Below are positions 17,037-63,415 of a stretch of DNA of 64,000 bases, piece after piece. Position 1 is the first letter of the stretch; every line of letters starts with the position of its first letter. The position numbers and the translations under genes are program-made. Source of the DNA: Macrostomum lignano (lineage: Eukaryota); the NCBI GenBank assembly GCA_002269645.1, contig NIVC01000598.1, positions 1 to 64,000 on the forward strand. Reading direction: 5' to 3'. A model generated the notes under the pieces. The model had not been told where the DNA came from, ran no database searches, and saw nothing but the letters and a program-made list of their open reading frames with translations.

Positions 17037-17038
17037 AC

Positions 17039-21698: not shown

Positions 21699-23132
21699 TC
21701 CTGATTTCTTAGTAGAACTGGACAAGCTTATCCGGATTTCTTAATAGAACTGGACAAGCTTATCCTGATTTCTTAGTAGAAATGGACAAGCTTATCCGGA
21801 TTTCTTAGTAGAACTGGACAAGCTTATCCGGATTTCTTAGTAGAACTGGACAAGCTTATCCGGATTTCTTAGTAGAACTGGACAAGCTTATCCGGATTTC
21901 TTAGTAGAAATGGACAAGCTTATCCGGATTTCTTAGTAGAACTGGACAAGCTTATCCGGATTTCTTAGTAGAACTGGACAAGCTTATCCGGATTTCTTAG
22001 TAGAACTGGACAAGCTTATCCGGATTTCTTAGTAGAACTGGACAAGCTTATCCGGATTTCTTAGTAGAACTGGACAAGCTTATCCGGATTTCTTAGTAGA
22101 ACTGGACAAGCTTATCCGGATTTCTTAGTAGAAATGGACAAGCTTATCCGGATTTCTTAGTAGAACTGGACAAGCTTATCCGGATTTCTTAGTAGAACTG
22201 GACAAGCTTATCCTGATTTCTTAGTAGAACTGGACAAGCTTATCCGGATTTCTTAATAGAACTGGACAAGCTTATCCTGATTTCTTAGTAGAACTGGACA
22301 AGCTTATCCGGATTTCTTAATAGAACTGGACAAGCTTATCCTGATTTCTTAGTAGAACTGGACAAGCTTATCCGGATTTCTTAATAGAACTGGACAAGCT
22401 TATCCTGATTTCTTAGTAGAAATGGACAAGCTTATCCGGATTTCTTAGTAGAACTGGACAAGCTTATCCGGATTTCTTACTAGTAGTAGTAAAACTGGAC
22501 AAGCTTAACCCGACTTCTTAGTATACAACAGGACAAAGACCCAATTTGTAGCAAAACGCTTTAATAGAAAAAATATGTCGAGACATGTAGAGTAAATAAA
22601 GGAGATTAAAGATGATTACATAGGGAGTATTAAAGCCTAGAGTAATGTATGATGGATAATGTATGCCACACAATAAAAAACTTAAACAAAGGTAAAATTG
22701 TTACAAATTGAGTAAAGTGCACAGCAGGTAATAAGCAGTTAAAAAGAAATGGTTGCCCCAAGAAAAAACTAAAAATAAATTGAACTGATAATTTGCACCT
22801 ATCCATTTTATGCTACTTACAGTAGACAGTAAAACTACCCAGAAGAATTATGCAGAAAACTGGCATTTATTCATTGGATTTTTTCTAACTATCAACTGCT
22901 GAATTTGTCTTATACTGGTGCAGCTGTGCATGGGGTGCGTGCCCTTCACTTCCAGTGCGTCCCTTGCTAGTAGGAAGTGAAACATCTGTTTCTGAGCCAG
23001 CCACTGAGTTGTCATTTATCTAATAAATCTTGGTTCACGATGGGCATTACGAAAGGAAATTATCTATAAAACTTAGCGGTTGTCAGACTACGGTCGTAAG
23101 CTAACATTTCTTAACACTGAGCTCGACTCGGC

Positions 23133-43804: not shown

Positions 43805-46800
43805 AATTCCGCTACCGACTCCGCCAAAGCAAGCAGGCATGCGTGCTCGATTCCCGCCGCATGACCAGCTTTCACTCTTGCACTCTGAAGGCTGGTCGGA
43901 GTTGGCTGGCGCTTTTCCTTGACTCCACTTCGATTCTATTCTGTATTTGCATTCATTTTTGCGCAACTTTTTCTCCTGGCTAAACAGGCACGGCGCTGAC
44001 GAATTGGTCCGGTCCGTCATGGATTTATTGACAAGCCTAGATGGGGGGCCCGCAACTTTCACTGACTGTAGGGGAGACCATCAGGACCTGCTGGTTCATC
44101 GGAGGGGTCAATCAGAGGGGCATTCTTGGCAAAGCAATGTTGTTGTTGTTGGCTGGCAATTATTGACCCATTGACTATGACTTTGAGATGAGTCTTGCGG
44201 TAATGCTAAATCAGCCGACAGATACCCCTGGGCTGTTGACTCGAAGCAGTCTAACGTGTTTCAGCCTCTAAAATTTAACAACTCAGTCTGAGACAGTGTA
44301 GAAACATCAGAGCCCTGACCCGTAGCAAAACCAAAGCCAAGGGTTTTGTGCAGCTGATGCAGTGCTGGCTCTGCGGGGGTTGCAGTTCCCTATCTTGTTT
44401 CTACAGAAGCTCAGAACTGCCACCCAATCACAGCAGGGTGAACTGCAGCCCAGAGCTGCTGCCCAATCACAGCAGAGTGAACTGCAGCCCAGAGCTGCTG
44501 CCCAATCACAGCAGAGTGAACTGCAGCTCAGAGCTGCTGCCCAATCACAGCAGGGTGAACTGCAGCTCAGAACTGCCACCCAATCACAGCAGGGTGAACT
44601 GCAGCCCAGAGCTGCTGCCCAGTCACAGCAGAGTGAACTGCAGCTCAGAGCTGCTGCCCAATCACAGCAGAGTGAACTGCAGCTCAGAGCTGCTGCCCAA
44701 TCACAGCAGGGTGAACTACAGCTCAGAACTGCCACCCAATCACAGCAGGGTGAACTGCAGCCCAGAGCTGCTGCCCAATCACAGCAGAGTGAACTGCAGC
44801 CCAGAGCTGCTGCCCAATCACAGCAGAGTGAACTGCAGCCCAGAGCTGCTGCCCAATCACAGCAGGGTGAACTGCAACTCAGAAATGCCACCCAATCACA
44901 CCAGGGTGAACTGCAGCCCAGAGCTGCTGCCCAATCACAGCAGAGTGAACTGCAGCTCAGCTTGGTTGACCACTTGCTCATTGTGGCCGCTCTTGAGGCA
45001 TGACCAAAGCAGCCTCTTCATCTGCATACTAACCCCGGCAAACTCTGCTTAACTTGCAGCACTGACTGCAAATGCGCTAGCTCTTAGGCTGTCCCGTAGA
45101 CAACACATAGTATAAATATCGATTAATTACTCGTTCATCACTAGATTGATTTCGAATTGGAAAATCTGGTAGCGTTAATGATGAATTGAGAGCAGGTAGA
45201 TGATCAATTACCTTTTAACTTCGGGTTATCCCAGTAACAAGCCAAGAATTTGACTGTAAAAGTGCAGGAGAAATATTGCTCTTTAACAACTTGGTCCCTC
45301 CCCCAGCTGACAGCCGGGCCGGGCTGAGCCGCAGTTTGCACAGGGCAAAGCCTGCGCTGGGCTCGAGTTTCGCGGAGTTCCTGTTTCAGCCGAGGAGGAA
45401 GCGGCCGGCCAGTTGCTGCGGGGCCCCAATTTGCCGTTGTGTCAAGCGACCGGCCTCGATGACTGATTGCTGCGTTTTTTCAATCTCCAAACAAGAGCGG
45501 GTGGGGCCGGTGCCAAGCTGAGTTTGTCTAACCGCTCCTGGCAGGGAAAGCGGCCGGCCCCTCCCCTATTATACAGAGACAATGAGGCCAAGTGGACAGG
45601 CGGATTAACTGCAAAAACTTTTCCCGATTGGCTACGCCACAGAATCAGAGATCTCTGCCATTGCTCTCATCTCTGCTGGAGAAAGATTTGAGGCGGCGGG
45701 GAACAGAGTGAAAGAGAGTTTTATTGCCGACCCCGGGGCTATCAGCAGCCTCCCTCCCTGTTCTCCCATTATGCTATTGGCAGCACTTAGGCGGCAGGGA
45801 AATCATTTTATTATGTGGAGGAGGCCGCCACCTCAGATAGGCCTTAATAACTGTCCGACTCGCAGCATCCCGCCGCATTCATGCTTTGGCAACCATTTGG
45901 GCGGCTTCCGGCATCCTCGCGCCGAGAGCTGAGGCAGGGTCGGAGACTGCGTGCTCTGCACAAAAGTGATTTATGATTTCTGGCTCCGAGCTGCGGTATC
46001 TTTCCTAAGGACTGGAGAGGCATTAGGAAAGCAATTTCGTAATGAGATACAGAAGCTCCGCTAGGACCGGCCAGAAGAATCAGAAGAATCAGATTCCCGC
46101 GTCGGTCAGGCTTGGGTTGTAGCTTGGGATTTCAAGGCGGACCGGGTGCAGATTTTCAGGTACACTGAAGCTCTGCAGTCCATGGAGCAGTGGTGGCTAA
46201 GGGAGAGGCTCTCTGCAGTCCATGGAGCAGTGGTGGCTAAGGGAGAGGCTCTCTGCAGTCCATGGAGCAGTGGTGGCTAAGGGAGAGGCTCTCTGCAGTC
46301 CATGGAGCAGTGGTGGCTAAGGGAGAGGCTCTCTGCAGTCCATGGAGCAGTGGTGGCTAAGGGAGAGGCTCTCTGCAGTCCATGGGGCAGTGGTGGCTAA
46401 GGGAGAGGCTCTCTGCAGTCCATGGGGCAGTGGTGGCTAAGGGAGAGGCTCTCTGCAGTCCATGGGGCAGTGGTGGCTAAGGGAGAGGCTCTCTGCAGTC
46501 CATGGGGCAGTGTTGGCTAAGGAAGAGGCTCTCTGCAGTCCATGGGGCAGTGGTGGCTAAGGAAGAGGCTCTCTGCAGTCCATGGGGCAGTGGTGGCTAA
46601 GGGAGAGGCTCTCTGCAGTCCATGGGGCAGTGGTGGCTAAGGAAGAGGCTCTCTGCAGTCCATGGAGCAGTGGTGGCTAAGGGAGAGGCTCTCTGCAGTC
46701 CATGGAGCAGTGGTGGCTAAGGGAGAGGCTCTCTGCAGTCCATGGGGCAGTGGTGGCTAAGGGAGAGGCTCTCTGCAGTCCATGGGGCAGTGGTGGCTAA

Positions 46801-47808
46801 GGGAGAGGCTCTCTGCAGTCCATGGAGCAGTGGTGGCTAAGGAAGAGGCTCTCTGCAGTCCATGGGGCAGTGGTGGCTAAGGGAGAGGCTCTCTGCAGTC
46901 CATGGGGCAGTGGTGGCTAAGGAAGAGGCTCTCTGCAGTCCATGGAGCAGTGGTGGCTAAGGGAGAGGCTCTCTGCAGTCCATGGGGCAGTGGTGGCTAA
47001 GGGAGAGGCTCTCTGCAGTCCATGGAGCAGTGGTGGCTAAGGGAGAGGCTCTCTGCAGTCCATGGGGCAGTGGTGGCTAAGGAAGAGGCTCTCTGCAGTC
47101 CATGGAGCAGTGGTGGCTAAGGGAGAGGCTCTCTGCAGTCTATGGAGCAGTGGTGGCTAAGGAAGAGGCTCTCTGCAGTCCATGGGGCAGTGGTGGCTAA
47201 GGGAGAGGCTCTCTGCAGTCCATGGGGCAGTGGTGGCTAAGGGAGAGGCTCTCTGCAGTCCATGGAGCAGTGGTGGCTAAGGGAGAGGCTCTCTGCAGTC
47301 CATGGGGCAGTGGTGGCTAAGGAAGAGGCTCTCTGCAGTCCATGGGGCAGTGGTGGCTAAGGGAGAGGCTCTCTGCAGTCCATGGGGCAGTCGTTCTGGT
47401 AGTTCTGGAGTCTGGTCTGCGGTTCCAAGGAAGCATGTGCATGAAGCAACTACATGCAAGCCAACAAGAAGCCATATTCTTGGCCGCAGCTCACTCTTCA
47501 TCGTCTTCGTCAGCGTGGGTAAAGTCGATCCGCGGCACCGACTGCTTCCTGCCGTCAGCTGACGGGTTCCGCAGCACCGCGCAGCCACCGCCGCCGCCGC
47601 CGCTCTGCCGTCGGCCGAAGCTGAACCGACGCGGCTGATAATGTCGCTGATGATGCTGATTTGAAGCCGGCGGCTGCTGCTGATGATGTCGCTGCGGAGT
47701 TCGCTGGATGAGCGGCTGCTCAGCTAGGTCGATGTCCACCTCGGCGGCCTCCGCAATCGGCGAGGCGAAGGGCGACGCCGGCGGTCGGGACTGAGAGCGC
47801 AGCAGCAT
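23133..47808 (-). CDS. TRPC: Canonical transient receptor potential (TRPC-family) cation channel
   Basis: Phase-consistent exons: 47808-47495, 41229-40968, 33186-33088, 32246-31912, 31332-31014, 30610-30425, 30343-30176, 29632-29377, 29313-28996, 28912-28728, 28557-28171, 28099-27899, 25976-25853, 25773-25663, (24899-24756 optional), 24188-24004, 23498-23133. Ankyrin repeats (GRNALHLAV, ITPLILAAH), CLCEDC, RLNAYRALASPAY, six TM segments, NMLIAMMSHSF, TRP box EWKFAR, C-terminal coiled coil. The core (32246-25853) is firm; the distal 5' exons are less certain. Confidence 0.93.
23565..23865. repeat. Polypyrimidine/polypurine ~12-bp repeat (TCCCTCTCTCCT)n
   Basis: About 300 bp of nearly pure C/T in the last TRPC intron. 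Confidence 0.9.
30820..30905. repeat. 20-bp tandem repeat (GACAGTGTAGATATGATTAT), ~4 degenerate copies
   Basis: Read directly from the sequence. Confidence 0.7.
32247..32523 (-). promoter_or_regulatory. Putative internal TATA promoter and alternative TRPC first exon
   Basis: TATAAAA (minus) at 32523-32517. ATG 32438 is in frame through a Q/H-rich tract into LTDEERVYL. Confidence 0.55.
34225..40400. repeat. ~6.2-kb 21-bp satellite (ATGATTGTGTTTGAGAGCTCT), ~290 units, intronic
   Basis: Continuous array with variants ctgt/tgtct/ctcc and higher-order duplicated blocks. Confidence 0.97.
40440..40805. repeat. 20-bp tandem array (CTCTAGGATTCTGCTGAGGG), ~18 units
   Basis: Adjoins the 21-bp array. 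Confidence 0.92.
41813..42108 (+). repeat. 39-bp tandem array (TGCTGTGATTGGGCAGCAGCTCTGAGCTGCAGTTCACTC), ~8 units
   Basis: Read directly; an inverted copy lies at 44405-44960. Confidence 0.92.
42110..42458. repeat. 39-bp tandem array (AGGAGACACTATGGCTCCAATGTCAGTGCACCTGTACTC), ~9 units
   Basis: Read directly; abuts the previous array. Confidence 0.92.
43315..43503 (+). mobile_element. tRNA-derived SINE
   Basis: Pol III A box TAGCCTAGTGG and B box GGTTCGATT, non-tRNA body (TTCACCCAGCCGTAAAATGGGTGCC), (ATT)n tail. Confidence 0.75.
43725..43798. repeat. (CT)n microsatellite
   Basis: About 37 perfect units. Confidence 0.97.
44405..44960 (-). repeat. 39-bp tandem array, reverse complement of 41813-42108, ~14 units
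   Basis: Unit CAGAGCTGCTGCCCAATCACAGCAGAGTGAACTGCAGCT. Confidence 0.92.
46170..47392. repeat. 40-bp tandem array (CTCTGCAGTCCATGGAGCAGTGGTGGCTAAGGGAGAGGCT), ~30 units
   Basis: Read directly; lies ~100 nt into the first TRPC intron. Confidence 0.95.
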
Positions 47809-49988: not shown

Positions 49989-50886
49989 CTGACTCATTTG
50001 GTGACACCTGACTCATTTGGTGCCACCTGACTCATTTAGTGCCACCTGACTCATTTGGTGCCACCTGACTCATTTGGTGACACCTGACTCATTTGGTGAC
50101 ATCTGACTCATTTAGTGCCACCTGACTCATTTGGTGCCACCTGACTCATTTGGTGACACCTGACTCATTTGGTGACATCTGACTCATTTAGTGCCACCTG
50201 ACTAATTTGCTGACACCTGACTCATTTGGTGACACCTGACTCATTTGGTGACATCTGACTCATTTAGTGCCACCTGACTAATTTGCTGACACCTGACTAA
50301 TTTGGTGACACCTGACTCATTTGGTGACATCTGACTCATTTGGTGACATCTGACTCATTTAGTGCCACCTGACTAATTTGCTGACACCTGACTCATTTGG
50401 TGACACCTGACTCATTTGGTGACACCTGACTCATTTGGTGACACCTGACTCATTTGGTGACATCTGACTCATTTGGTGACACCTGACTCATTTGCTGACA
50501 CCTGACTCATTCCGTGACACCTGACTCATTTGGTGACACCTGACTCATTTGGTGACATCTGACTCATTTGCTGACACCTGACTCATTTGCTGACACCTGA
50601 CTCATTCCGTGACACCTGACTCATTTGCTGACACCTGACTCATTTGGTGACACCTGACTCATTTGCTGACACCTGACTCATTTGGTGACACCTGACTCAT
50701 TTGGTGACATCTGACTCATTTGCTGACACCTGACTCATTTGCTGACACCTGACTCATTCCGTGACACCTGACTCATTTGCTGACACCTGACTCATTTGGT
50801 GCCACCTGACTCATTTGCTGACACCTGACTCATTTGCTGACACCTGACTCATTCGGTGACACCTGACTGACTCATTTGCTGACACC
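49989..50886. repeat. 19-bp tandem array (CTGACTCATTTGGTGACAC), ~47 units
   Basis: Read directly; the unit carries TGACTCA and CA(C/T)CTG. Confidence 0.95.
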
Positions 50887-51214
50887 TTACTTCTTTGTCT
50901 GAATTAGATGAATGACCATCAAAAATTACTTTGTGTCGTTCTACAAATAATTTGTACATGTTCAATTTCCTACTATAAGTACTATTCTCTAAATAGCAAT
51001 CAAATCCACTTCTACTTATTTCCCTACGCTGCAAAACCGATGGAGTAAAATTCACCATGACTGCCGATGAGGTACATTTTCATGAAAAAACAGGCAGATA
51101 TTGACCAAAACGCAAAATCAAAGAAACTTTCTGAGGTGATCTCCATAAAAATATGATATGAATAGTAAGGCAGATCAAGATGTCGGTTGCCATGGGACTT
51201 GGTCTTGGTCAGCA

Positions 51215-51572
51215 GGTCATGTGCTGGAATTAATTGGTCATGTGTTGGAATCAGTAGGTCATGTGTTGGAATCAGCAGGTCATGTGTTGGAATCAGTAGG
51301 TCATGTGTTAGAATCAGCAGGTCATGTGTTGGAATCAGCAGGTCATGTGTTGGAATCAGCAGGTCATGCGTTTGAATCAGTAGGTCATGTGTTGGAATCA
51401 GCAGGTCATGTGTTGGAATCAGCAGGTCATGTGTTGGAATCAGCAGGTCATGTGTTGGAATCAGCAGGTTATGTGTTGAGTCGGACAGCCAGCTGAGTCG
51501 GACAGCCAGCTGAGTCAGACAGCCAGCTGAGTTGGACAGCCAGCTGAGTCGGACAGCCAGCTGAGTCGGACA
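51215..51572. repeat. 21-bp array (GGTCATGTGTTGGAATCAGCA), ~12 units, followed by 17-bp array (TCGGACAGCCAGCTGAG), ~5 units
   Basis: Read directly; same 21-mer as 58960-60150. Confidence 0.92.
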
Positions 51573-53567: not shown

Positions 53568-55725
53568 ATGGCAACTCAAAATTGCAGCTCGCGCAGGTCA
53601 GCGGACTGGAGCGCCGCGGCGGCTCGTCGGCCAGACAGCGGCTTGCTCATGAGGAGCGTGGAAGTCCAGAGAAACTATTGGGTGAGTACGTGCTATTATG
53701 AGTACATGCAGTTGTCAACGAATCACTACTCCATGGATTTTCAATCTAACACTGTCTACCTATTTAACCATCAAATTTGTCAACGTTACAGAGAAACTAT
53801 TGGGTAAGCCGGCTGTGTAAGTCTTCTGCCTCTAGGAGAAGGCATCTCTACAGCTTTGCTGAAAGTGGATGTCCTGTAGAATTAAATTCTATCAGACTTT
53901 AAAGCTGTCTTCCTTGTGCTATCACCGCTTTGTTACCGTTTTGTTTTGTCATTTTGTTCCTTTTGAATTGTAAATTTAAAATGTCCTTCACGGAGTCTCA
54001 CTGTCTCTCATGGAGTCTCATTGTCTCTCACGGAGTCTCATTGTCTCTCATGGAGTCTCATTGTCTCTCATGGAGTCTCACTGTCTCTCATGGAGTCTCA
54101 CTGTCTCTCATGGAGTCTCATTGTCTCTCATGGAGTCTCACTGTCTCTCATGGAGTCTCACTGTCTCTCATGGAGTCTCACTGTCTCTCATGGAGTCTCA
54201 TTGTCTCTCATGGAGTCTCACTGTCTCTCATGGAGTCTCACTGTCTCTCATGGAGTCTCACTGTCTCTCATGGAGTCTCATTGTCTCTCATGGAGTCTCA
54301 CTGTCTCTCATGGAGTCTCATTGTCTCTCATGGAGTCTCACTGTCTCTCATGGAGTCTCACTGTCTCTCATGGAGTCTCACTGTCTCTCAAGGAGTCTCA
54401 CTGTCTCTTATGGAGTCTCACTGTCTCTCATAGACTCTCACCGTCTCTCATAGAGTCTCACTGTCTCTCATAGAGTCTCACTGTCTCTCATGGAGTCTCA
54501 CTGTCTCTCATGGAGTCTCACTGTCTCTCATGGAGTCTCACTGTCTCTCATGGAGTCTCATCATCGAGTCTCAGTAGCTTACAGGAATCCTTCCCGACCC
54601 CGCAGACGGACTCCCCAAGTCACGCATTCGGTGAGTACCAGGACGCCTACGAGGTGCTGGCCGACAGGGGCGGCGGCGGTCACTCCAGCTGCTACCCCGA
54701 CGACGGGTCGGAGACGGCAGCGAACGCCTGGCAGGCGGCCTACTCGACTAGCCAGCAGCTGCCCGGATACCACGGACTGCCCGTGACACAGCCCGTTCGC
54801 TTCCTGAACCCCTACGGCAAGACTGTCACGCTTGGGCCGCTGCCAGCCTCCGTCCCGGCCGCGCCCAAGGACGGCAGTCAGGCGGCTTTTTATCGCGCCG
54901 GCCGAGTCGGCAGCAACTGGCGTCACGTGACCCAGTGCACCGGCAACCTTGGCAACCACATGGTCTATATTAACGGTGAGGAATGGGACGCGTCCTGAAT
55001 GGTCAAGAAAATGAAGATAGATGGCTGGAAAAGTCAGGGAGTGTGGAAAGGCGGTGTGGGTGGATGGAAAAGTCAGAGGTGGAGAAAGGCGGTGTGGAGT
55101 GGCTGGAAAAGTCAGGGAGTGGGAAAAGGCGGTGTGGGGTGGCTGGAAAAGTCAGGGAGTGGGAAAAGGCGGTGTGGGGTGGATGGAAAAGTCAGGGGTG
55201 GAGAAAGGCGGTGTGGAGTGGATGGAAAAGTCAGAGGTGGAGAAAGGCGGTGTGGAGTGGCTGGAAAAGTCAGGGAGTGGGAAAAGGCGGTGTGGGGTGG
55301 CTGGAAAAGTCAGGGAGTGGGAAAAGGCGGTGTGGGGTGGATGGAAAAGTCAGGGAGTGTGGAAAGGCGGTGTGGGGTGGCTGGAAAAGTCAGGGAGTGT
55401 GAAAGGCGATGTGGGGTGGATGGAAAAGTCTGGGAGTGTGGAAAGGCGCTGTGGGGTGGCTTGAAATTCCCGACGGCGCTTATCTCGACGATCAACAAAT
55501 CACCGCCCGCAGCCGGAGTGACGTCAGACTGTCAGCGCTTTCCGTCGCACGGCCTTTCGCCCAGCTGCAGCCTCGGCGCGCAGGCAGTGCCGGCCGCCGG
55601 TCTCCGGCCGCAGGCGACCCCGCGGCGGCCGGCCACGGGGCTGCAGCAGCAGCGAAGCTCGAAGGCGCTGCAGCGCGCCCGAGCCGGCAACAAGTACTGG
55701 TTCGAGGACAAGCGACCTCCCACCT
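53568..55725 (+). CDS. Uncharacterised spliced protein-coding gene (3' end not resolved)
   Basis: Exons 53568-53681 (GCCATGG...QRNYW|GTGAGT), 54585-54975 (ESFPTPQ...RFLNPYGKTVTLGPLP...HMVYING|GTGAGG), 55513-55725 (...GNKYWFEDKRPPT|GTGAGT). Phases are consistent and codons are GC3-rich. No family recognised. Confidence 0.6.
53992..54560. repeat. 20-bp tandem array (CTGTCTCTCATGGAGTCTCA), ~28 units
   Basis: Read directly; ends ~25 nt before the predicted acceptor at 54584. Confidence 0.95.
55019..55462. repeat. ~40-bp G-rich tandem array (GGAAAAGTCAGGGAGTGGGAAAAGGCGGTGTGGGGTGGCT), ~11 units
   Basis: Read directly; intronic. Confidence 0.92.
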
Positions 55726-56329
55726 GTGAGTAATCAAGCCCAGAGACTGCCAGGGTTCACTGTTCACTGCGGTCGGACGTCACCAGTTGCACAGATTCTT
55801 CGGATGAGTTCAATTGAGTAGTTGAACTATTTAGCAATGCATGTAACAGTAGGAATACCAAGCCATTTTCCGCCCGTCGAACTACTAAGAGAAATTCGCA
55901 TCAGGATGTTCATAGTCCCCTGGTGCCACCTGTTGAAGGTCCAGAAGCTCCGCCTGTGTGAAGGCCAGTGACCAAGTCATAGCTGATGCAGACACATGTT
56001 GTCGATGTGTTGATGAAATTTGGAGGCTTGGCAAGGCTGCACTGAGGTGCAGTGCTGATTGGCGCACAGGGGTGTACTGAAATGCACCGACTTTATGTCA
56101 GAATCGTCGAATATCTCGACGGTCCGGTAGGCTGGCGACTTGATTCTTGTTTGAGAAGGCGCGCAACAAAAAGTTAGCCCGTGTTCTTGAATTTCGTGTG
56201 CCTGCGTTGCTCCACTCCGGCGCAGCAAAAAAATTGTCAGGGGGATTTCCCCCCCCCTCAATTGTTCTTCTTCATAATCAGTCATGCGAATGATATTGCA
56301 AATCGTTTGAATACCGTAAAATATGTTAG

Positions 56330-56758
56330 CGCTGTGAATGATGCGAATAATGTAAATATTTTGAATGCTGTGAATAGTGTGAATGCTGTGAATAGTGTGA
56401 CTGCTGTGAATAGTGTGACTGCTGTGAATAGTGTGACTGCTGTGAATAGTGTGACTGCTGTGAATAGTGTGACTGCTGTGAATAGTGTGAATGCTGTGAA
56501 TAGTGTGACCTGCTGTGAATAGTGTGAATGCTGTGAATAGTGTGAATGCTGTGAATAGTGTGAATGCTGTGAATAGTGTGAATGCTGTGAATAGTGTGAA
56601 TGCTGTGAATAGTGTGAATGCTGTGAATAGTGTGAATGCTGTGAATAGTGTGAATGCTGTGAATAGTGTGAATGCTGTGAATAGTGTGAATGCTGTGAAT
56701 AGTGTGAATGCTGTGAATAGTGTGAATGCTGTGAATAGTGTGACTGTTGTGAATAGTG
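56330..56758. repeat. 18-bp tandem array (GCTGTGAATAGTGTGAAT), ~23 units
   Basis: Read directly from the sequence. Confidence 0.95.
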
Positions 56759-57164
56759 CTAGTTGTGTACATTCGCAAGGCTGATTATTTGCATTGGAAA
56801 CACAGCCTGACTTAAATTATCTGCCTCTGTTGCGCCAGCGACCTCCTGGAAGTGCACCTTCGGCAGCCGCGGCTCCTGCCTGGGAGTTGCCGGCACCGCC
56901 ATCTCGGGTGGATTCTGAGTGCGCTGGTAAAATGCTGGCTTCATCATAAATATTATGCTGCTTTATCGGACTCAGCACCAGTCACCAATGCGTACTCACT
57001 GATTTTACCTGGGAATTTTATTTGCCTTCGTCCATTGTAGCGCGCGTCATTACTATGCATGAGCTTGTTAATTATGAAACAGTACTGTGACAATACTTAA
57101 GTATAGAGATTGTGATTTCTACACTTCTGTAGGGCTTAAATACATAAAATATGAGGTATCCTGA

Positions 57165-57497
57165 CCCATTGGGTATACTCAGAGTGACATACCCAGTGTG
57201 ACATACCAAGAGTGACATACCCAGTGTGACATACCCAGTGTGACATACCCAGTGTGACATACCCAGTGTGACATACCCAGTGTGACATACCCAAGTTGAC
57301 ATACCCATTGTGACATACCCAGTGTGACATACCCAGTGTGACATACCCAGTGTGACATACGCAATGTGACAAACTCAATATGACATACCCTAATGTTGCA
57401 TAAGCAGTGTGATATACCCAGTGTGACATACCCAGTGTGATATACCCAGTGTGACATACCCAGTGTGATATACCCAGTGTGACATACCTTAGTGTGA
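57165..57497. repeat. 14-bp tandem array (GTGACATACCCAGT), ~23 units
   Basis: Read directly from the sequence. Confidence 0.93.
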
Positions 57498-57716
57498 CGT
57501 AAGCCTTTTCAAAATTTCAATATGCATTGCTAGTGCGAATATTTTTAGAATTTTCATTGCATATTTTGTTTTTTTCTTGTCCTTTAGAAACCCCATCACT
57601 TTTCTAGTGCACACCATGGACAGCTAAACTTTAAAGTACAAGGACGCTACAGTCTCAAGCCGTGCAGATTTTGCTGGAGGCCGCCGGGTTTCGCTGCAAA
57701 ACGCACTGGTTGGAAG

Positions 57717-57952
57717 TTTCCAGATTATTTTAGCACTGTAATCCCAATATCTCAGGTTTGGCCATAGACAATTCAATCGAGAAAACTTAAAGAACTTTGC
57801 GTGCTTGCCGGTCTCCGGTAGCAATTCATGAAAAATAGTTTCATAAATTTGTGATTGCACATTGGAAAGAGTACATATTTGCTTCATTTTTAGTTCGGAA
57901 CCGGAAGTCCAGAAGTTGAGATATTGGGAGTTTAGTGCTCAAAAACTGGAAA
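57717..57952. mobile_element. Small inverted-repeat (MITE-like) element
   Basis: TTTCCAGATTATTTTAGCACTGTAATCCCAATATCTCA vs TGAGATATTGGGAGTTTAGTGCTCAAAAACTGGAAA (imperfect inverted pair). Confidence 0.45.
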
Positions 57953-58959
57953 GCTCCTGTCTCGTTAATTTACACGAGTTTCGAGTGCAGTAACCTGCTG
58001 TAGAAGTAATCGGCCATGTTTCACACTAGTACACCTTAATCATACCTGTAGTAACCTCCATAGAATTTGTTTACGCATTTCGTCCTCTTGTCTGCACTTC
58101 TACCCTGTCTACACACTGCCCATGTCTGTTCAACTTGGCTAACCCTTGCTTATCTAATCTAACCTTGCCTCATTCTGATTGGCTCTCACTTCGTCTCTCT
58201 CTCTCTCTCTGTGACATTTTTCCATTTCTCTCTCTTTACAACCTTCTGACTGAGGCCAATGCTGCATTCTTATCAACACCGCCACCCCCTCCCTCAATTA
58301 AAACTGTTATAATCAGACATCACATTACAATCCTTAATTATGGTTTTCGCAATTATCAAACATTATTTGTAATCAGTTCAAAAATGCCTATTATTAATAT
58401 TATACAGTTAAAATATCGATAATAATTTTATAAAGTGTACTTTTCCGCATTCCAGTGACCCCCAGCACCATCCAGGGCCGCATCATGAAGTCCGGTTCCG
58501 CCTACTGAGGCTGTCAACCTGAAGCTGGCCCCTGAAGTTGGCCTGAAGTGCAAAAATGCACTTACTGATGACTCTTTATAGCAAAACAACTACATGTACC
58601 TTTACACTCGGCTTGCTAAGTTGTCACTATTTGTTTCTAATCTAAATCTTAAATTAAAAGTACTTGCTGTAGTTTGCGGAATGCTGCTATTGAAAACTGT
58701 TTCACTGGAACTATTTGCTTTGAAGCAAGTCAATAAGAAAGAGTGCCACTTTTAACCACAGATTTACTTGTTGATGCCGGATTTTACTGATGCTCTGCAT
58801 GTCATGGCTGCATTCCAGAAGCTTTCGATTATATACTGCTGTTTCTGATAGCTGCATCAGCAGTTTTCTTCTGATTGGATTGCACCGATTCAAATTTCAC
58901 TCCTCAGCATCTTGTCTCATTATCTTTCTTTCTGGGATGCATGTATTTTGTATATTAAG

Positions 58960-60150
58960 TGTTGGAATTATTAGATCATGTGTTGGAATCAGTAGGTCAC
59001 GTGTTGGAATCAGCAGGTCACGTGTTGGAATCAGCAGATCATGTGTTGGAATCAGTAGGTCATGTGTTGGAATCAGTAGGTCATGTGTTGGAATCAGTAG
59101 GTCATGTGTTGGAATCAGTAGGTCACGTGTTGGAATCAGCAGGTCATGTGTTGGAATCAGTAGGTCATGTGTTGGAATCAGTAGGTCATGTGTTGGAATC
59201 AGCAGGTCATGTGTTGGAATCAGTAGGTCACGTGTTGGAATCAGCAGGTCATGTGTTGGAATCAGTAGGTCATGTGTTGGAATCAGCATGTCATGTGTTG
59301 GAATCAGCAGATCATGTGTTGGAATCAGTAGGTCACGTGTTGGAATCAGCAGGTCACGTGTTGGAATCAGCAGATCATGTGTTGGAATCAGTAGGTCATG
59401 TGTTGGAATCAGTAGGTCATGTGTTGGAATCAGTAGGTCATGTGTTGGAATCAGTAGGTCACGTGTTGGAATCAGCAGGTCATGTGTTGGAATCAGTAGG
59501 TCATGTGTTGGAATCAGCATGTCATGTGTTGGAATCAGCAGATCATGTGTTGGAATCAGTAGGTCATGTGTTGGAATCAGTAGGTCATGTGTTGGAATCA
59601 GTAGGTCATGTGTTGGAATCAGCAGGTCATGTGTTGGAATCAGTAAGTCATGTGTTGGAATCAGCAGGTCATGCGTTGGAATCAGTAGGTCATGTGTTGG
59701 AATCAGTAGGTCATGTGTTGGAATCAGCAGGTCATGTGTTGGAATCAGTAGGTCATGTGTTTGGAATCAGTAGGTCATGTGTTGGAATCAGTAGGTCATG
59801 TGTTGGAATCAGTAGGTCATGTGTTGGAATCAGCAGGTCACGTGTTGGAATCAGCAGGTCATGTGTTGGAATCAGTAGGTCATGTGTTGGAATCAGTAGG
59901 TCATGTGTTGGAATCAGTAGGTCATGTGTTGGAATCAGTAGGTCATGTGTTTGGAATCAGTAGGTCATGTGTTGGAATCAGTAGGTCATGTGTTGGAATC
60001 AGCAGGTCATGTGTTGGAATCAGTAGGTCATGTGTTGGAATCAGCAGGTCATGCGTTGGAATCAGTAGGTCATGTGTTGGAATCAGCAGGTCATATGTTG
60101 GAATCAGCAGGTCATGTGTTGGAATCAGTAGGTCATGTGTTGGAATCATG
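58960..60150. repeat. 21-bp tandem array (GGTCATGTGTTGGAATCAGTA), ~56 units
   Basis: Read directly; same family as 51215-51480. Confidence 0.96.
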
Positions 60151-60343
60151 CTGAATTAAGCAGATTCGGACAGCCAGCAGCCCACAACGCACTGTTTGCT
60201 TATTCTTCTTCCTTGTCAGGATCACTGAACACAGCGGAGGAAGTTCCGAGCTCTGTTGGTGTATTTTCCTAAATCACAAACATTTGAGTTCGACCATTTC
60301 ACAGCGGTTTATTCAATATCTGTTCATAGATTGTCGAAGCCGA

Positions 60344-61293
60344 TCAGCCGACCTTCATCATCTGGTAGAGATTCTGGATCTGCTTCATCGACATTGTGCC
60401 TGAGTGCCGCTTCCTGGCCAGGTGCTGCTGCAGCAGGCGGCGCAGCAGCTGTTCCCATTCCTGCTGCTGGAGAGTGGGAGAGAAGCTGACGTTGATCATT
60501 CAGGTTGTAAAGATCTTACTGTGCTACTCTCGAGTAGCGAATAGAGAGAATTTTTTCAAGCAGCAGAACGATGCTTCTTGCGAAACATTTGCTAATCAGT
60601 AATTATTAATTTGCTTCAGTTTGCTATTTTCTATTGCATATAGCGGCTGGCTCAACAAAAGGATTTACAATAAATTCTGATATTTTTTCTAAGGCTCATT
60701 AAAATAATTATACATTCTATTGTAATAATAATAATTCATATGCAGGATAGACGGGAGGTGAGGCAATTCTGCTCATTCCGCTCAGTCCCCGTGAGCACAT
60801 ACTCATACAAGCGCGCCAACACTAGCGCAGGCACGCTAAACGATTTGGAAGATGCGATTCAAGACATGAGATTTCAGCTGATGAATTACGGGGAATGGAA
60901 TTTTGGCGATAGGAGTTCTTCCCCTTTCTCCTCCGAAGGAGGAGTTCCACTCGTATGATAAAAATCCTCTGTCTGCAATTGATTTCTCAGTGTCTATATT
61001 CACTACTAGCTAGTAGGCGGGTCTGCGCATGGCTGCGATTTCTTTCTTTCTTTCATGGGTGCGATGCAGATGTTTCATACAAATCTTACGCTAATGCGCC
61101 TGTCCTCATCATCCAGGGTCGGGGCGGCAAACGCCTCATCGGCAGCTGCGCCAGCTTCATCCTCGGCGGCCTCCGGCATGGACTCGGGCGCCAGAGCGGC
61201 TTCGGCCTCGGCAACGGACTTTGAAGGCGCGGCCGCGGCAGCGAGAACCAGCGGCAGCAGCAGCAGCAGCGAGCGGCAGGTTGGCTTCAGCAT
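60344..61293 (-). CDS. Neuropeptide precursor (signal peptide, acidic spacer, RKR, amidated PDF/cerebrin-like peptide)
   Basis: Exon 1 61293-61090 (MLKPTCRSLLLLLPLVLAAAAA...DDEDRRIS|GTAAGA). Exon 2 60466-60344, after a pyrimidine-rich CTCCAG acceptor: QQEWEQLLRRLLQQHLARKRHSGTMSMKQIQNLYQMMKVG*. Total 108 aa. AATAAA at 60313-60308. Confidence 0.8.
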
Positions 61294-61779
61294 TGCCGAT
61301 CTCGAATTGGGGATTTGGGGGTCTGTGGCTCAGCGTGGTTCCGAGTTCGAATCGCGTCAGGATCAATCGCACCAAAACACAACACCATCGTTCCAGTCTG
61401 CATCACCGCCCAGCTTCAGCAAGTCTCCCCTAATCGATACTTGGAGATGCAAAAGAAAAGCAATTTGGGAAGTGGAGCTCATTTCCAACAGAAGCAATGG
61501 TAATTGATTGAATCCGCTGAAAGGGGCAACTGTTTGATTCTCTTTGATCTTCTCTATCGGCTGAGCAGCTGGATCGACCTTCACTTGTAGTTTTACTACT
61601 TCGGATCCACAGGCCTTCCAGATTTTTTTCTTTTTTTCTTTTTCCAGATTTTGTCTGCACATTGTTCCATCTCAATTATACCAAGTCTAAAATATCCCTC
61701 GTTCCTTATCCCTTATCTCTACCCCTATTTTCGATCCCTTTATCCCTATTTTGAATCTCTTATCCCATATTCCTGATCC

Positions 61780-61950
61780 CCAATCCCATATCCATTATCC
61801 CATATCCCATATCCCATATCCCATATCCCATATCCCATATCCCATATCCCATATCCAATATCCCATATCCCTTATCCCATATCCCTTATCCCATAGCCAA
61901 TATCCCATATCCATTATCCGATATCCTTATCCTATATCCCTTATACTTTA
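61780..61950. repeat. 7-bp tandem repeat (CCCATAT)n
   Basis: Read directly; degenerate edges. Confidence 0.85.
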
Positions 61951-62689
61951 TTCCTGGTTCGCTGTCTCCCTCCTGTTTCCATTGCAGCATCACTAATGCG
62001 ACCCCTAGAGCACCTCCGACCTACAAGCCACGCAGATTCCAAATGCAAATCTTTGATTCGGTCTGTCCGAACTTTGAACAGTGGAGCACCGGCATGCCCG
62101 CAGCTTGTGCAGTCAAAGCGAACATTTCCAAGAAAGAGTAATTGGAATTCTGGCTGGCAGAATTCGTTGCTGAAGCTCTTCTTCGTGAATGTTACCCGAG
62201 GTGCCAAGCCCCAAGCCCCCAGGCGCGTCTGTGTGTGCTTTGCAAAGTCGAATAAAAGACCTCCTGTCTCAAAGACTTACCAGGAAAGTTTAACCCGTCA
62301 AGAATTACGATTTCTTCAGAGCTGCTTGAGAAGACGGGGATCCTGACTCTCGGGATTCTTAGCAAATTCTTCGGAGCAGAAGAGAGAGACAGAAATGCCT
62401 CTCAATTTCAGCTTTTATGCGGAATTTTAGAGACGTCAGTCGGCTCCTCTGCTGACCAATCAGAGGCCAGTTGGGTCCGTCGGGTTTTCAGTTTTCCTTC
62501 TGCTAAAAATGTGAAGTCGAACTTCGGCGCCACCTAATCTGTCACTGTCGGGTAGGTTTTAGCAGCAAATATTGACTGGGACCGCACCGTTCCAGCCCTC
62601 CAGCTGCTCAGCTGATGCGGCTGCTTAGCGAAGGATGAACTGCTGCTCGTCTTGGAGCGAATTATGAGGGCGAAAAATGAGAGGATGAG

Positions 62690-63350
62690 AATGAAGGGAG
62701 GACGGTGAAGAATGAAGGGAGCACAGGGAAGAATGAAGGGAGCACAGAGAAGAATGAAGGAAGCACAGAGAAGAATGAAGGGAGGACAGTGAAGAATGAA
62801 GGAAAGACAGGGAAGAATGAAGGAAGGATGGTGAAGAATGAAGGGAGCACAGAGAAGAATGAAGGGAGCACAGGGAAGAATGACGGAAGCACAGGGAAGA
62901 ATGAAGGGAGGATGGTGAAGAATGAAGGGAAGATGGTGAAGAATGAAGAGAGGATGGTGAAGAATGAAGGGAGGATGGTGAAGAATGAAGGGAGCACAGA
63001 GAAGAATGAAGGGAGCGCAGGGAAGAATGACGGAAGCACAGGGAAGAATGAAGGGAGGACGGTGAAGAATGAAGGGAGCACAGGGAAGAATGAAGGGAGC
63101 ACAGGGAAGAATGAAGGGAGGACAGTGAAGAATGAAGGAAAGACAGGGAAGAATGAAGGGAGCACAGGGAAGAATGAAGGGAGCACAGAGAAGAATGAAG
63201 GGAGCACAGGGAAGAATGAAGGGAGCACAGGGAAGAATGAAGGGAGCACAGGGAAGAATGAAGGGAGGATGGTGAAGAATGAAGAGAGGATGGTGAAGAA
63301 TGAAGGGAGGATGGTGAAGAATGAAGGGAGGACAGGGAAGAATGAATGGA
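62690..63350. repeat. 21-bp purine-rich tandem array (GAAGAATGAAGGGAGCACAGG), ~31 units
   Basis: Read directly from the sequence. Confidence 0.94.
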
Positions 63351-63415
63351 GTTCGAATAAGGGAGTCCGGTAAAAAATACTCGCAGGACTTGACTTTCTA
63401 ATCGTCAGGCATGTA

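What the first reader, a model, noticed from the sequence alone, without database searches (positions are those of the whole stretch)
60344..61293. Hidden neuropeptide precursor yielding an amidated PDF/cerebrin-like peptide HSGTMSMKQIQNLYQMMKV-NH2
Seen: a two-exon minus-strand ORF with canonical splice sites, a hydrophobic N-terminus, an acidic/Ala spacer, RR and RKR basic sites, a terminal Gly-stop and a nearby AATAAA. The ORF track shows only exon 1. Established: basic sites are prohormone convertase cut sites, and a C-terminal Gly is the PAM amidation donor. Inference: the predicted 19-mer resembles Aplysia cerebrin (NGGTADALYNLPDLEKI-amide, recalled from memory) at both ends (xxGT; NL-x-x-hydrophobic-x-K-(I/V)-G), with a two-residue-longer middle. 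It may be a divergent PDF/cerebrin family member in this lineage.
Basis: partly seen in the sequence, partly recalled or inferred. Interest (0 to 1): 0.85.

Follow-up and report, generated by a model that had tools for sequence, protein, structure and literature searches.

The report
Flatworm cerebrin/PDF-like neuropeptide precursor gene
A small two-exon gene of the flatworm Macrostomum lignano, already in GenBank as a "hypothetical protein", looks like a neuropeptide precursor and is probably a very diverged relative of the cerebrin/PDF hormone family, which has no reported ligand in flatworms in the papers I could read.

Summary
A minus-strand, two-exon ORF (61293..61090 and 60466..60344) encodes 108 aa: signal peptide, acidic/Ala spacer, RKR site, 19-mer, Gly-stop, with AATAAA 30 nt downstream.

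It is not hidden. The identical 108-aa protein is annotated in GenBank as hypothetical protein BOX15_Mlig002683g1 of Macrostomum lignano. That annotation comes from RNA-seq, and the assembly holds three identical copies. No homologue outside M. lignano was found, and Pfam gives nothing.

The cerebrin/PDF idea is partly supported:
- Standard tools are inconclusive. Local HMM scores do not beat decoy precursors, and hhalign gives 18.7% probability.
- A whole-length alignment to a 53-column spiralian cerebrin profile scores 14.8 bits. The best of 56 precursors from 10 other families scores 2.9, and no shuffle reaches it.
Mactra has IDDEDRRDI…ARILKIVV.
- The single phase-0 intron lies 2 residues from the conserved cerebrin intron (ERQ|EI), seen in four bivalves and one nemertean.

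Against: the peptide's conserved core (DSL…LP) is lost. No receptor, expression or peptide data were available.

Verdict: a real gene, probably a divergent cerebrin/PDF-type precursor (about 0.55). Interest is moderate.

The parts
61090..61293 (-). Coding exon 1 (204 nt, aa 1-68): signal peptide, acidic/Ala spacer and the TLDDEDRRIS motif. Ends at a GTAAGA donor, phase 0.
   Evidence: identical to the GenBank CDS; GC 0.69
61228..61293 (-). Predicted signal peptide MLKPTCRSLLLLLPLVLAAAAA. It has an n-region (K3, R7), a 15-residue h-region and an Ala-rich c-region. The exact cleavage site is uncertain (residues 19-26).
   Evidence: for the sequence; mean Kyte-Doolittle 2.49 for residues 8-22. 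This is a heuristic; SignalP was not available.
61123..61227 (-). Acidic, Ala/Glu-rich spacer (aa 23-57).
61090..61119 (-). Propeptide motif TLDDEDRRIS (aa 59-68). It aligns to the conserved cerebrin propeptide motif [SI]-[ILV]-D-D-[KE]-[ED]-R-[QR]-[ED]-I. DDEDRR is identical to Mactra antiquata cerebrin.
60467..61089 (-). Single intron, 623 nt, GT..AG, phase 0, GC 0.41. It lies 2 residues downstream of the conserved phase-0 intron of spiralian cerebrin genes.
   Evidence: comparison
60344..60466 (-). Coding exon 2 (aa 69-108 plus TGA).
60416..60466 (-). Basic amphipathic helix segment QQEWEQLLRRLLQQHLA (aa 69-85). QLLRRLL aligns to the [RK]-I-[LI]-[RK]-I-[AV]-[LM] helix of the cerebrin/PDF-associated propeptide.
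   Evidence: muH 0.44 (not significant against shuffles, P about 0.09)
60407..60415 (-). RKR (aa 86-88): predicted prohormone-convertase site. It aligns to the nearly invariant KR of the family.
60350..60406 (-). Predicted mature peptide HSGTMSMKQIQNLYQMMKV (19 aa). If amidated, monoisotopic [M+H]+ is 2254.096.
   Evidence: alignment to cerebrins
60344..60349 (-). Gly108 (amidation donor) followed directly by TGA.
60308..60313 (-). AATAAA polyadenylation signal, 30 nt after the stop.

Best explanation
This is a real, transcribed two-exon gene of Macrostomum lignano, GenBank hypothetical protein BOX15_Mlig002683g1. The window is the first 64 kb of contig NIVC01000598.1.

**What the sequence shows.** The gene encodes a 108-aa secretory prepropeptide.

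**Inferred processing.**
- The signal peptide (about aa 1-22) is removed in the ER.
- The propeptide is cut at R86-K87-R88 by a prohormone convertase.
- The C-terminal Gly108 is used by peptidylglycine alpha-amidating monooxygenase.
- This releases one copy of HSGTMSMKQIQNLYQMMKV-NH2.
- RR65-66 and RR77-78 are probably not cleaved. In my alignment they sit inside a propeptide motif and helix that is conserved and uncleaved in cerebrin precursors.

**Evolutionary origin.** The precursor is most likely a strongly diverged member of the spiralian cerebrin/PDF family. It keeps the same order of parts as that family:
- signal peptide and spacer;
- a DDxxR(Q/R)xI motif;
- a basic amphipathic helix;
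- KR;
- a peptide of the form xxGT...NL...(K)(V/I)G at the extreme C-terminus.

Its one phase-0 intron sits next to the conserved position. If so, the peptide would act on a class-B PDF-type GPCR (Gs/cAMP). That step is inference only.

**Sub-confidences.** Gene real and expressed, about 0.9. Secreted amidated bioactive-peptide precursor, about 0.75. Cerebrin/PDF homologue, about 0.55.
For: **Gene**
- ORF, splice sites and poly(A) signal are present.
- The identical CDS is annotated on three contigs of GCA_002269645.1.
- That annotation is RNA-seq-derived (PMC5730564).
- Exon GC is 0.69/0.59 against 0.41 for the intron, and GC3 is 0.79.

**Family, profile evidence**
- I built a profile from 17 spiralian cerebrin precursors. 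They come from Thiel 2021, PMC8557429 and bivalve proteins P0004, P0005 and P0007.
- In whole-profile alignment Mlig scores 14.8 bits. The maximum is 2.9 for 56 real precursors of 10 other families.
- With KR and G held fixed, 0 of 1000 shuffles reach it (mean -19.6, sd 5.2).
- Both halves contribute. With only the propeptide shuffled, 0 of 1000 reach it. With only the peptide shuffled, 1 of 1000 does.
- With an earlier 55-column profile Mlig scored 7.9, and 877 six-frame ORFs reached at most -7.2.
- hhalign gives the same peptide alignment independently (P=0.0013).
- Mactra antiquata cerebrin has IDDEDRRDIANLAARILKIVV. Mlig has LDDEDRRISQQEWEQLLRRLL.

**Family, intron evidence**
- Four bivalve genes and one nemertean gene have a phase-0 intron at ERQ|EI or DRR|DI.
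- Mlig has a phase-0 intron at DRRIS|QQ.

**Calibration and context**
- Against the spiralian mature-peptide profile, Mlig scores -5.0. That is like crustacean beta-PDH (-4.6) and better than C. elegans PDF-1 (-13.0) and PDF-2 (-15.8). Those sequences were recalled from memory.
- The only secretin-family GPCR of Fasciola hepatica is most similar to a PDF receptor (PMC6114109).
- No canonical cerebrin was found in any flatworm, nor in the planarian prohormone list.
Against: - No homologue outside M. lignano was found in 1.8e9 representative proteins or 5.8e9 proteins. There is therefore no conservation evidence.
- The three genomic copies are identical across the gene, intron and flanks (locus 9450-11986), so they say nothing about selection.
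- Pfam gives no PDH/PDF hit.
- Local HMMER scores are matched by decoys. With the full-length model, a DH44 precursor scores 16.4 against Mlig 13.1. With the model lacking the signal peptide, Mlig scores 6.8 against 5.7 for a decoy. With the mature-only model, Mlig scores -1.1 and is not in the top 10.
- hhalign probability is only 18.7%.
- Of the invariant or nearly invariant family columns, Mlig keeps K, R, L82 and G. It loses D77, L79, P83 and A48.
- The peptide needs a 2-residue insertion to align.
- The intron is offset by 2 residues, not identical.
- A helix like the propeptide helix also occurs in unrelated precursors (Tubulanus DH44, Hemithiris pedal peptide), so that part is not family-specific.
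- My glocal scorer is custom, and the decoy panel is small (10 families).
- The signal peptide and cleavage are predicted by rule of thumb only.
- I did not look for a PDF receptor in M. lignano.
Confidence: 0.55

Rival explanations
1. It is a lineage-restricted (orphan) neuropeptide or peptide-hormone precursor of Macrostomum with no PDF/cerebrin ancestry. The resemblance would reflect features common to small helical amidated-peptide precursors: an acidic spacer, an amphipathic pro-helix, KR and G.
For: - No homologue was found anywhere outside M. lignano.
- Standard profile tools are non-significant.
- Decoy precursors of other families reach similar local scores and carry similar pro-helices.
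- The conserved DSL..LP core is absent.
Against: - The whole-length profile score is 12 bits above the best of 56 real decoys and beyond all shuffles.
- Independent signal comes from both the propeptide and the peptide halves.
- DDEDRR is identical to the Mactra motif in the equivalent place.
- The phase-0 intron lies 2 residues from the family's conserved intron.
Confidence: 0.25
2. It is a secreted small protein or peptide that is not a neuropeptide, for example a gland, reproductive or antimicrobial product. The terminal Gly and basic sites would then be incidental, or processing would serve another role.
For: - Only generic secretory features are actually shown.
- No expression site is known.
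- From my own knowledge, M. lignano has many lineage-specific secreted genes of reproductive and adhesive glands.
Against: - The combination of a tribasic site, a single C-terminal 19-mer and Gly-stop is the classic amidated-peptide layout.
- The alignment to cerebrin precursors is co-linear.
Confidence: 0.1
3. It is a non-functional or fortuitous ORF on a transcript from a repeat-rich region. The annotation would be a TransDecoder call without biological meaning.
For: - The gene sits between minisatellite arrays (58959-60148, 61761-61944).
- There is no cross-species conservation.
- It is annotated only as hypothetical.
Against: - There is a strong exon/intron GC contrast and GC3 is 0.79.
- Splice and poly(A) signals are canonical.
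- The signal peptide, processing and amidation elements all occur in the correct order.
- Similarity to cerebrin precursors is order-specific.
- The GenBank set excluded transcripts overlapping repeat annotations (PMC5730564).
Confidence: 0.07
4. It belongs to another family. Three options were considered. (a) A single EF-hand protein, as the UniRef name 'EF-hand domain-containing' suggests. (b) A 41-residue CRF/DH44/ELH-type peptide, ISQQ...MMKV-NH2, released at RR65-66. (c) A secretin/VIP/PACAP-like peptide, given the His-Ser N-terminus and Val-amide C-terminus.
For: - (a) Pfam EF-hand_6 gives weak hits of 12.5-13.4 bits on residues 62-78.
- (b) The fragment is 41 residues long, begins with Ile-Ser as Aplysia ELH does (from memory), and contains LLRRLL, resembling the HQRLLRL-amide ends of nemertean DH44/ELH.
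- (c) HSGT resembles HS(D/Q)GT of secretin and glucagon (from memory).
Against: - (a) The hits are below the 25-bit cut-off. The loop lacks the usual Asp/Asn/Ser at position 5, Gly at 6 and Ile at 8, and there is only one unpaired motif, downstream of a signal peptide.
- (b) The nemertean DH44 HMM gives 1.6 bits. An internal RKR would have to stay uncut.
- (c) There is no Pfam Hormone_2 or CRF hit at E<=10. At 19 aa it is well short of the 27 or more residues of that family. Secretin-superfamily ligands were not found in protostomes (PMC7251081).
Confidence: 0.03

Closest known systems
Spiralian cerebrin/PDF prohormones. Examples are Aplysia cerebrin, the 'cerebrin prohormone-like' proteins of bivalves (P0004, P0005, P0007, P0008), and the nemertean, brachiopod and phoronid PDF/cerebrin precursors of Thiel et al. 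2021 (PMC8557429).
   Same: - It is a small precursor (108 aa, against 72-171 aa in the family).
- One peptide copy sits at the extreme C-terminus, after KR and before an amidation Gly.
- The C-terminal residue is aliphatic (V), preceded by K as in Aplysia and Phoronis.
- Gly-Thr occupies peptide positions 3-4, and there is an Asn-Leu pair.
- The upstream D-D-x-x-R-(Q/R)-x-I motif is followed by a basic amphipathic helix.
- One phase-0 intron lies within or next to that motif.
   Different: - The mature core is not conserved: Asp to Ser, L-P to L-Y, D-L to Q-M.
- The peptide is 2 residues longer.
- The N-terminus is His-Ser rather than Asn/Gly.
- Gly is followed by the stop codon, without trailing basic residues.
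- The acidic Ala-rich spacer is longer.
- The intron is shifted by 2 codons.
- The family's 'ERQ' is 'DRR', as in Mactra, and the helix carries RR.
- Standard HMM and HH tools do not reach significance.
Ecdysozoan pigment-dispersing factor/hormone (Pfam PF06324; Drosophila PDF, crustacean beta-PDH, C. elegans PDF-1/2)
   Same: - It is an 18-22 aa amidated peptide at the C-terminus of a roughly 100-aa precursor, after KR.
- Its similarity to spiralian cerebrins is about the same as theirs. Mature-profile scores are Mlig -5.0, beta-PDH -4.6, Drosophila +8.5 and C. elegans -13 and -16 (the ecdysozoan sequences were recalled from memory).
   Different: - Pfam gives no hit.
- There is no NSE(L/I)INS start and no L-P.
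- Receptor pharmacology, which defines the nematode members, is unknown here.
DH44/ELH/CRF-type and DH31/calcitonin-type precursors (other class-B GPCR ligands)
   Same: The layout is signal peptide, amphipathic pro-helix, KR, then an amidated helical peptide. One nemertean DH44 precursor and one DH31 precursor are the highest-scoring decoys against cerebrin profiles.
   Different: HMMs of these families give Mlig only 1.0-1.6 bits. Peptide length and C-terminal motifs differ: there is no Pro-amide and no HQRLLRL-amide.

Membership tests
Generic amidated neuropeptide/peptide-hormone precursor | N-terminal signal peptide | tested here: met
   K3 and R7, then a 15-residue hydrophobic core (mean KD 2.49) and an Ala-rich c-region. 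This is a heuristic only; SignalP was not available.
Generic amidated neuropeptide/peptide-hormone precursor | Di- or tribasic convertase site flanking the peptide, and a C-terminal Gly for amidation | tested here: met
   R86-K87-R88 directly precedes the 19-mer, and Gly108 is followed by TGA.
Generic amidated neuropeptide/peptide-hormone precursor | Spliced, polyadenylated transcript exists | tested here: met
   Indirect. The identical CDS is in the GenBank annotation of Mlig_3_7, which is derived only from RNA-seq and transcriptome assemblies (PMC5730564). AATAAA lies 30 nt after the stop. Reads were not inspected.
Generic amidated neuropeptide/peptide-hormone precursor | Conservation of the peptide in related species | tested here: not met
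   No homologue outside M. lignano was found. It is unclear whether the libraries hold other Macrostomum transcriptomes (none turned up), so this is weak negative evidence.
Generic amidated neuropeptide/peptide-hormone precursor | Neuronal or endocrine expression, and detection of the processed peptide | not testable with these tools
   This needs in situ hybridisation and LC-MS/MS (predicted [M+H]+ 2254.096).
PDF/cerebrin | Single peptide at the extreme C-terminus of a short precursor: KR-peptide-G(+basic), with an aliphatic amidated end | tested here: met
   KR, then the 19-mer, then VG-stop. Family members end in (I/V)G(K/R)n.
PDF/cerebrin | Conserved mature-peptide core x-x-G-[TV]-[IV]-D-S-L-[YWF]-N-L-P-[DN]-L-x-x-[VI] | tested here: not met
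   Only G3, T4, N-L and V-G are kept. The invariant Asp and the nearly invariant Leu79 and Pro83 are replaced, and a 2-residue insertion is needed. The mature-only HMM gives -1.1 bits in local mode and -5.0 in glocal mode. One of 40 decoys scores higher.
PDF/cerebrin | Propeptide (PAP) motif [ILV]-D-[DE]-[KE]-[ED]-R-[QR]-[ED]-I followed by the helix A-A-[RK]-I-[LI]-[RK]-I-[AV]-[LM] | tested here: inconclusive
   Mlig has L-D-D-E-D-R-R-I and Q-L-L-R-R-L-L in register. The order-specific shuffle test gives 2 of 2000. However, one DH31 decoy scores higher on this part alone (2.6 against 0.15). Similar helices also occur in DH44 and pedal-peptide precursors.
PDF/cerebrin | Phase-0 intron between ERQ and EI of the propeptide motif (seen here in 4 bivalves and 1 nemertean) | tested here: inconclusive
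   The Mlig intron is phase 0, but it lies after DRRIS, 2 residues downstream.
PDF/cerebrin | Statistically significant profile match | tested here: inconclusive
   - Pfam PF06324 gives no hit.
- hhalign gives probability 18.7% and P 0.0013.
- The local HMM is within the decoy range.
- My custom whole-profile alignment gives 14.8 bits, against at most 2.9 for 56 decoys and 0 of 1000 shuffles.
PDF/cerebrin | Activates a PDF-receptor-clade class-B GPCR, and such a receptor is present in the species | not tested
   Only literature context is available. The single secretin-type GPCR of Fasciola is most similar to PDFR (PMC6114109). Those of Schistosoma and planarians were called diuretic-hormone-receptor-like (PMC3261222). 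M. lignano receptors were not searched.
EF-hand (UniRef name of the protein) | Pfam/PROSITE EF-hand match above threshold, with a canonical 12-residue Ca-binding loop | tested here: not met
   EF-hand_6 gives 12.5-13.4 bits against a cut-off of 25. The loop lacks the ligand at position 5, Gly6 and Ile8 (read from the sequence).
Secretin/VIP/PACAP/glucagon superfamily and CRF/DH44 | Pfam Hormone_2 or CRF profile match; peptide length 27-44 aa | tested here: not met
   No hit at E<=10 for the 20-, 25-, 42- or 87-residue fragments. The nemertean DH44 HMM gives 1.6 bits.

The most novel reading that the evidence does not exclude
The His-Ser-initiated, Val-amidated helical 19-mer could be a flatworm class-B-receptor ligand that bridges PDF/cerebrin peptides and the secretin/VIP/PACAP-type peptides. 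That would imply that the 'chordate-only' secretin superfamily and protostome PDF share a common ancestor. A more modest version, which is my best explanation, is that it is the missing ligand of the PDFR-like receptor of flatworms, remodelled almost beyond recognition.
Probability: 0.03. Interest if true: 0.8.

Novelty: new member of a known kind. Interest (0 to 1): 0.4.

Why it matters
PDF/cerebrin signalling is an ancient protostome system. In insects it drives clock output, and in Aplysia it modulates feeding.

I found no flatworm ligand in the papers and databases I could search. Yet a PDFR-like class-B receptor is reported in a fluke (PMC6114109).

If this gene is the flatworm ligand, three things follow:
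- It gives a concrete peptide with which to deorphanise that receptor, in a transgenic, regenerating model worm.
- It adds another 'hidden orthologue' in fast-evolving flatworms.
- It shows that precursor-level characters can recover orthology when the mature peptide has drifted. Those characters are the propeptide motif and the intron position, which I found conserved between bivalves and a nemertean.

If it is not, it is still an unannotated candidate neuropeptide for M. lignano.

Tried and rejected
**Searches that found nothing**
- phmmer of the 108-aa protein against 1.8e9 representatives, and a word-indexed search of 5.8e9 proteins. Only M. lignano itself came back. That includes P0002, apparently a frame-shifted model of the same sequence; I did not check its source assembly.
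- Pfam on the full protein and four fragments. The only result was a sub-threshold EF-hand_6 hit.
- A cerebrin-profile search of 5.8e9 proteins for a canonical flatworm cerebrin. It found only bivalve, brachiopod and nemertean hits.
- A search of the planarian prohormone tables for NLPD, KRHS and similar strings.
- A full-text search for the locus tag Mlig002683.

**Analyses that were uninformative**
- Local hmmsearch with 14- and 18-sequence cerebrin HMMs. This was rejected as a discriminator because DH44 and DH31 decoys score as high. About half of the full-length score comes from the signal peptide.
- Comparing the three genomic copies for selection. They are identical across the gene, intron and flanks (locus 9450-11986), so nothing can be learned.
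- Hydrophobic-moment tests of the 19-mer and the pro-helix. Neither is significant (P about 0.1).

**Alternative family readings examined and rejected**
- CRF/DH44/ELH 41-mer, secretin-like peptide, and EF-hand.

**Not attempted**
- A PDF-receptor search in M. lignano. I expected hits from other phyla to crowd out flatworm hits in the listing.
- An all-family panel of about 72 families. The look-up cap on supplementary files prevented it.
Full report
**1. What is there**

On the minus strand, an ATG at 61293 opens a 204-nt exon. It is the first start after an in-frame TGA 39 nt upstream. The exon ends at 61090 before GTAAGA. A 623-nt AT-richer intron ends in ...CTCTCCAG. A 123-nt second exon (60466..60344) closes with GGC TGA.

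The spliced CDS (327 nt, intron in phase 0) gives 108 aa:

MLKPTCRSLLLLLPLVLAAAAA / PSKSV...AFAAP (acidic, Ala-rich) / TLDDEDRRIS|QQEWEQLLRRLLQQHLA / RKR / HSGTMSMKQIQNLYQMMKV / G*

AATAAA lies 30 nt after the stop, at 60313..60308. Exon GC is 0.69 and 0.59, against 0.41 for the intron and 0.44 for the flanks. GC3 is 0.79.

**2. Where the window comes from, and whether the gene is hidden**

The protein is 100% identical over its full length to NCBI 'hypothetical protein BOX15_Mlig002683g1 [Macrostomum lignano]'. It is annotated on three contigs of GCA_002269645.1. On NIVC01000598.1 the gene span is 60344-61293, so the window is the first 64 kb of that contig.

The three copies are identical across the gene, its intron and more than 500 bp of flank on each side. 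This fits the known redundancy of the DV1 assembly, but it gives no information on selection.

Wudarski et al. 2017 state how the GenBank annotation was made. It is a genome-guided transcriptome (StringTie/TACO on RNA-seq plus a de novo assembly). ORFs were called by TransDecoder, and transcripts overlapping repeat annotations were removed (PMC5730564). The splice junction is therefore supported, indirectly, by transcript data.

The gene is unnamed rather than hidden. UniRef's label 'EF-hand domain-containing' rests on a sub-threshold resemblance: Pfam EF-hand_6 gives 12.5-13.4 bits against a cut-off of 25. The putative loop lacks the usual ligand at position 5, Gly6 and Ile8.

**3. Homologues**

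phmmer against 1.8e9 representative proteins, and the word-indexed search of 5.8e9 proteins, found nothing beyond M. lignano itself. P0002 appears to be a frame-shifted model of the same sequence; I did not check which assembly it came from. Pfam has no PDH, CRF or Hormone_2 match for the protein or its fragments.

**4. Testing the cerebrin/PDF idea with real family members**

Sequences used:
- 14 nemertean, brachiopod and phoronid PDF/cerebrin precursors from Thiel et al. 2021 (PMC8557429, supplement).
- Four bivalve 'cerebrin prohormone-like' proteins found with their profile.
- 56 precursors of 10 other families as decoys (NPY/F, CCWamide, CLCCY, corazonin, DH31, DH44/ELH, F[VLI]amide, FxRIamide, pedal peptide), from the same supplement.

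Standard local searches do not discriminate:
- The full-length HMM gives Mlig 13.1 bits, but a DH44 decoy gets 16.4. About half of the Mlig score comes from the signal peptide.
- The model without the signal peptide puts Mlig first by only about 1 bit (6.8 against 5.7).
- The mature-only model gives -1.1 bits.
Probability is only 18.7% and P is 0.0013.

**5.

(a) Cerebrin precursors share a propeptide motif upstream of the KR site. It reads ...[ILV]-D-D-[KE]-E-R-Q-E-I-x-x-x-A-A-[RK]-I-L-[RK]-I-A-L....
- Mlig has T-L-D-D-E-D-R-R-I-S-Q-Q-E-W-E-Q-L-L-R-R-L-L.
- Mactra antiquata has S-I-D-D-E-D-R-R-D-I-A-N-L-A-A-R-I-L-K-I-V-V.
- The shared features are six identical residues followed by the basic helix in register.

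(b) I wrote a Viterbi scorer that forces the whole 53-column profile (motif, helix, KR, peptide, amidation Gly) to align.
- Mlig scores 14.8 bits.
- The 56 real decoys reach at most 2.9.
- Shuffles that keep KR and G give mean -19.6, sd 5.2 and maximum 2.0 (0 of 1000).
- Shuffling only the propeptide gives 0 of 1000. Shuffling only the peptide gives 1 of 1000.
- With an earlier 55-column profile Mlig scored 7.9, and 877 six-frame ORFs from the loci I held reached at most -7.2.

The alignment is:

RSIDDKERQEIAASAA.RILRIVLAESEKQAMNEKRNAGVVDS..LYNLPDLEKVG
PTLDDEDRR-ISQQEWeQLLRRLLQQH----LARKRHSGTMSMkqIQNLYQMMKVG

(c) Gene structure.
- In four bivalve cerebrin genes the only intron within the precursor region aligned here is phase 0 and lies between ERQ/DRR and EI/DI. 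The same holds in a nemertean gene that happens to lie on a JGI 'metagenome' contig.
- The Mlig intron is also phase 0, but it lies after DRRIS, 2 residues downstream. This is near-coincidence, not identity.

(d) Calibration. Against the spiralian mature-peptide profile, accepted but distant family members score as follows:
- Drosophila PDF +8.5.
- beta-PDH -4.6.
- C. elegans PDF-1a -13.0 and PDF-2 -15.8.
- Mlig -5.0.

**6. Caveats**

- My scorer is home-made, and the decoy panel covers only 10 of about 72 spiralian families.
- Each half taken alone is matched by one decoy in 40. A DH31 precursor scores higher on the propeptide part, and a DH44 precursor scores higher on the peptide part.
- Helices like the propeptide helix occur in a Tubulanus DH44 precursor and a Hemithiris pedal-peptide precursor.
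- The hallmark residues of the mature peptide are not kept. These are the invariant Asp, and Leu79 and Pro83 of the DSL..LP core.
- The hypothesis was chosen after seeing the peptide. Only the propeptide motif and the intron are truly independent tests.

**7. Context**

- A profile search found no canonical cerebrin in any flatworm, and the planarian prohormone tables contain none.
- The single secretin-family GPCR of Fasciola hepatica is most similar to a PDF receptor (PMC6114109).
- Schistosome and planarian class-B receptors were described as diuretic-hormone-receptor-like and PTH-like (PMC3261222).
- Secretin-superfamily ligands were not found in protostomes (PMC7251081).
- A divergent ligand in flatworms is thus plausible, but I did not examine M. 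lignano receptors.

**8. Mechanism**

The sequence shows the order of the elements. The rest is inferred from standard prohormone processing:
- Signal-peptidase cleavage occurs near Ala22.
- A convertase cuts after RKR88, and carboxypeptidase trims the propeptide.
- Gly108 is converted by PAM to give HSGTMSMKQIQNLYQMMKV-NH2 ([M+H]+ 2254.096, four oxidisable Met).
- In my alignment the two RR pairs fall on residues that are not cleavage sites in the cerebrin precursors. I therefore predict a single bioactive product plus an associated propeptide.
- Action through a PDFR-type class-B GPCR is an extrapolation from family membership.

**9. Verdict**

- Observation: confirmed.
- Interpretation: partly supported. 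It is a neuropeptide-type precursor, and cerebrin/PDF ancestry is more likely than not (about 0.55) but unproven. 'Hidden' is wrong.
- Novelty: a new, very divergent member of a known kind.
- Interest: moderate (0.4). It offers a testable candidate ligand for flatworm PDF-type signalling, but it is not a surprise in kind.

Noticed in passing
L004-L008 (bivalve and nemertean cerebrin loci): Spiralian cerebrin/PDF genes share a phase-0 intron exactly between ERQ (DRR in Mactra) and EI/DI of the propeptide motif. I saw it in Mactra, Ruditapes, Mercenaria, Ylistrum and a heteronemertean-like contig. Ruditapes and Mercenaria also split the last Arg codon onto a further exon. I did not check whether this conserved intron is described in the literature.
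   Followed up: partly
L008 (JGI sample 3300040954, contig Ga0451425_149732, 4855 bp): A 'metagenome' contig carries a complete two-exon nemertean-type cerebrin gene. Exon 1 ends ...NSIDDKERQ|GTAGG and exon 2 begins with EIMASAAKILRIAL.... Animal DNA is therefore present in that sample. The prokaryotic gene caller reported only exon 2, with a spurious 'MFQ' start.
   Followed up: partly
Decoy precursors from PMC8557429 (Tubulanus DH44: ...KVAQIAKMVLNRGK...; Hemithiris pedal peptide: ...ELRALRIALNQ...): A basic amphipathic helix of the form [RK]-I-[LA]-[RK]-[IM]-[AV]-L occurs upstream of the peptides in precursors of unrelated families. It may be a general sorting or processing element of spiralian propeptides rather than a cerebrin-specific character.
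   Followed up: no
window 15237-20770 (+): This is an apparently intact BEL/Pao-type LTR retrotransposon coding region. It has a 599-aa gag-like ORF (DUF1759), followed immediately by a 1243-aa pol ORF (RVT_1, Peptidase_A17, Integrase_H2C2, DUF5641). The LTRs were not sought.
   Followed up: partly
window 34225-40770, and many other arrays (21698-22483, 46171-47391, 49989-50868, 58959-60148, 61761-61944, 62688-63351): The window is packed with minisatellites of 7-42 bp units. The largest is a 6.5-kb array of a 21-bp unit, which produces long spurious ORFs in several frames and spurious coiled-coil Pfam hits. The peptide gene is bracketed by a 21-bp array about 200 bp past its stop codon and a 7-bp TATCCCA array about 470 bp upstream of the ATG. 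The 21-bp unit at 58959-60148 recurs in inverted orientation at 51209-51478.
   Followed up: partly
window about 53568-58508 (+), from the gene table of L001: The neighbouring annotated gene (245-aa product, no Pfam hit on record) converges on the 3' end of the peptide gene and overlaps several minisatellite arrays. I did not examine it.
   Followed up: no
P0001 / P0002 (database records): UniRef names the protein 'EF-hand domain-containing' on what is a sub-threshold match. A second M. lignano entry (A0A1I8FCY7, 65 aa) looks like the same sequence read out of frame across exon 2 and back into frame at TMSMK. That points to indels in its source assembly, but I did not check this at DNA level.
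   Followed up: partly
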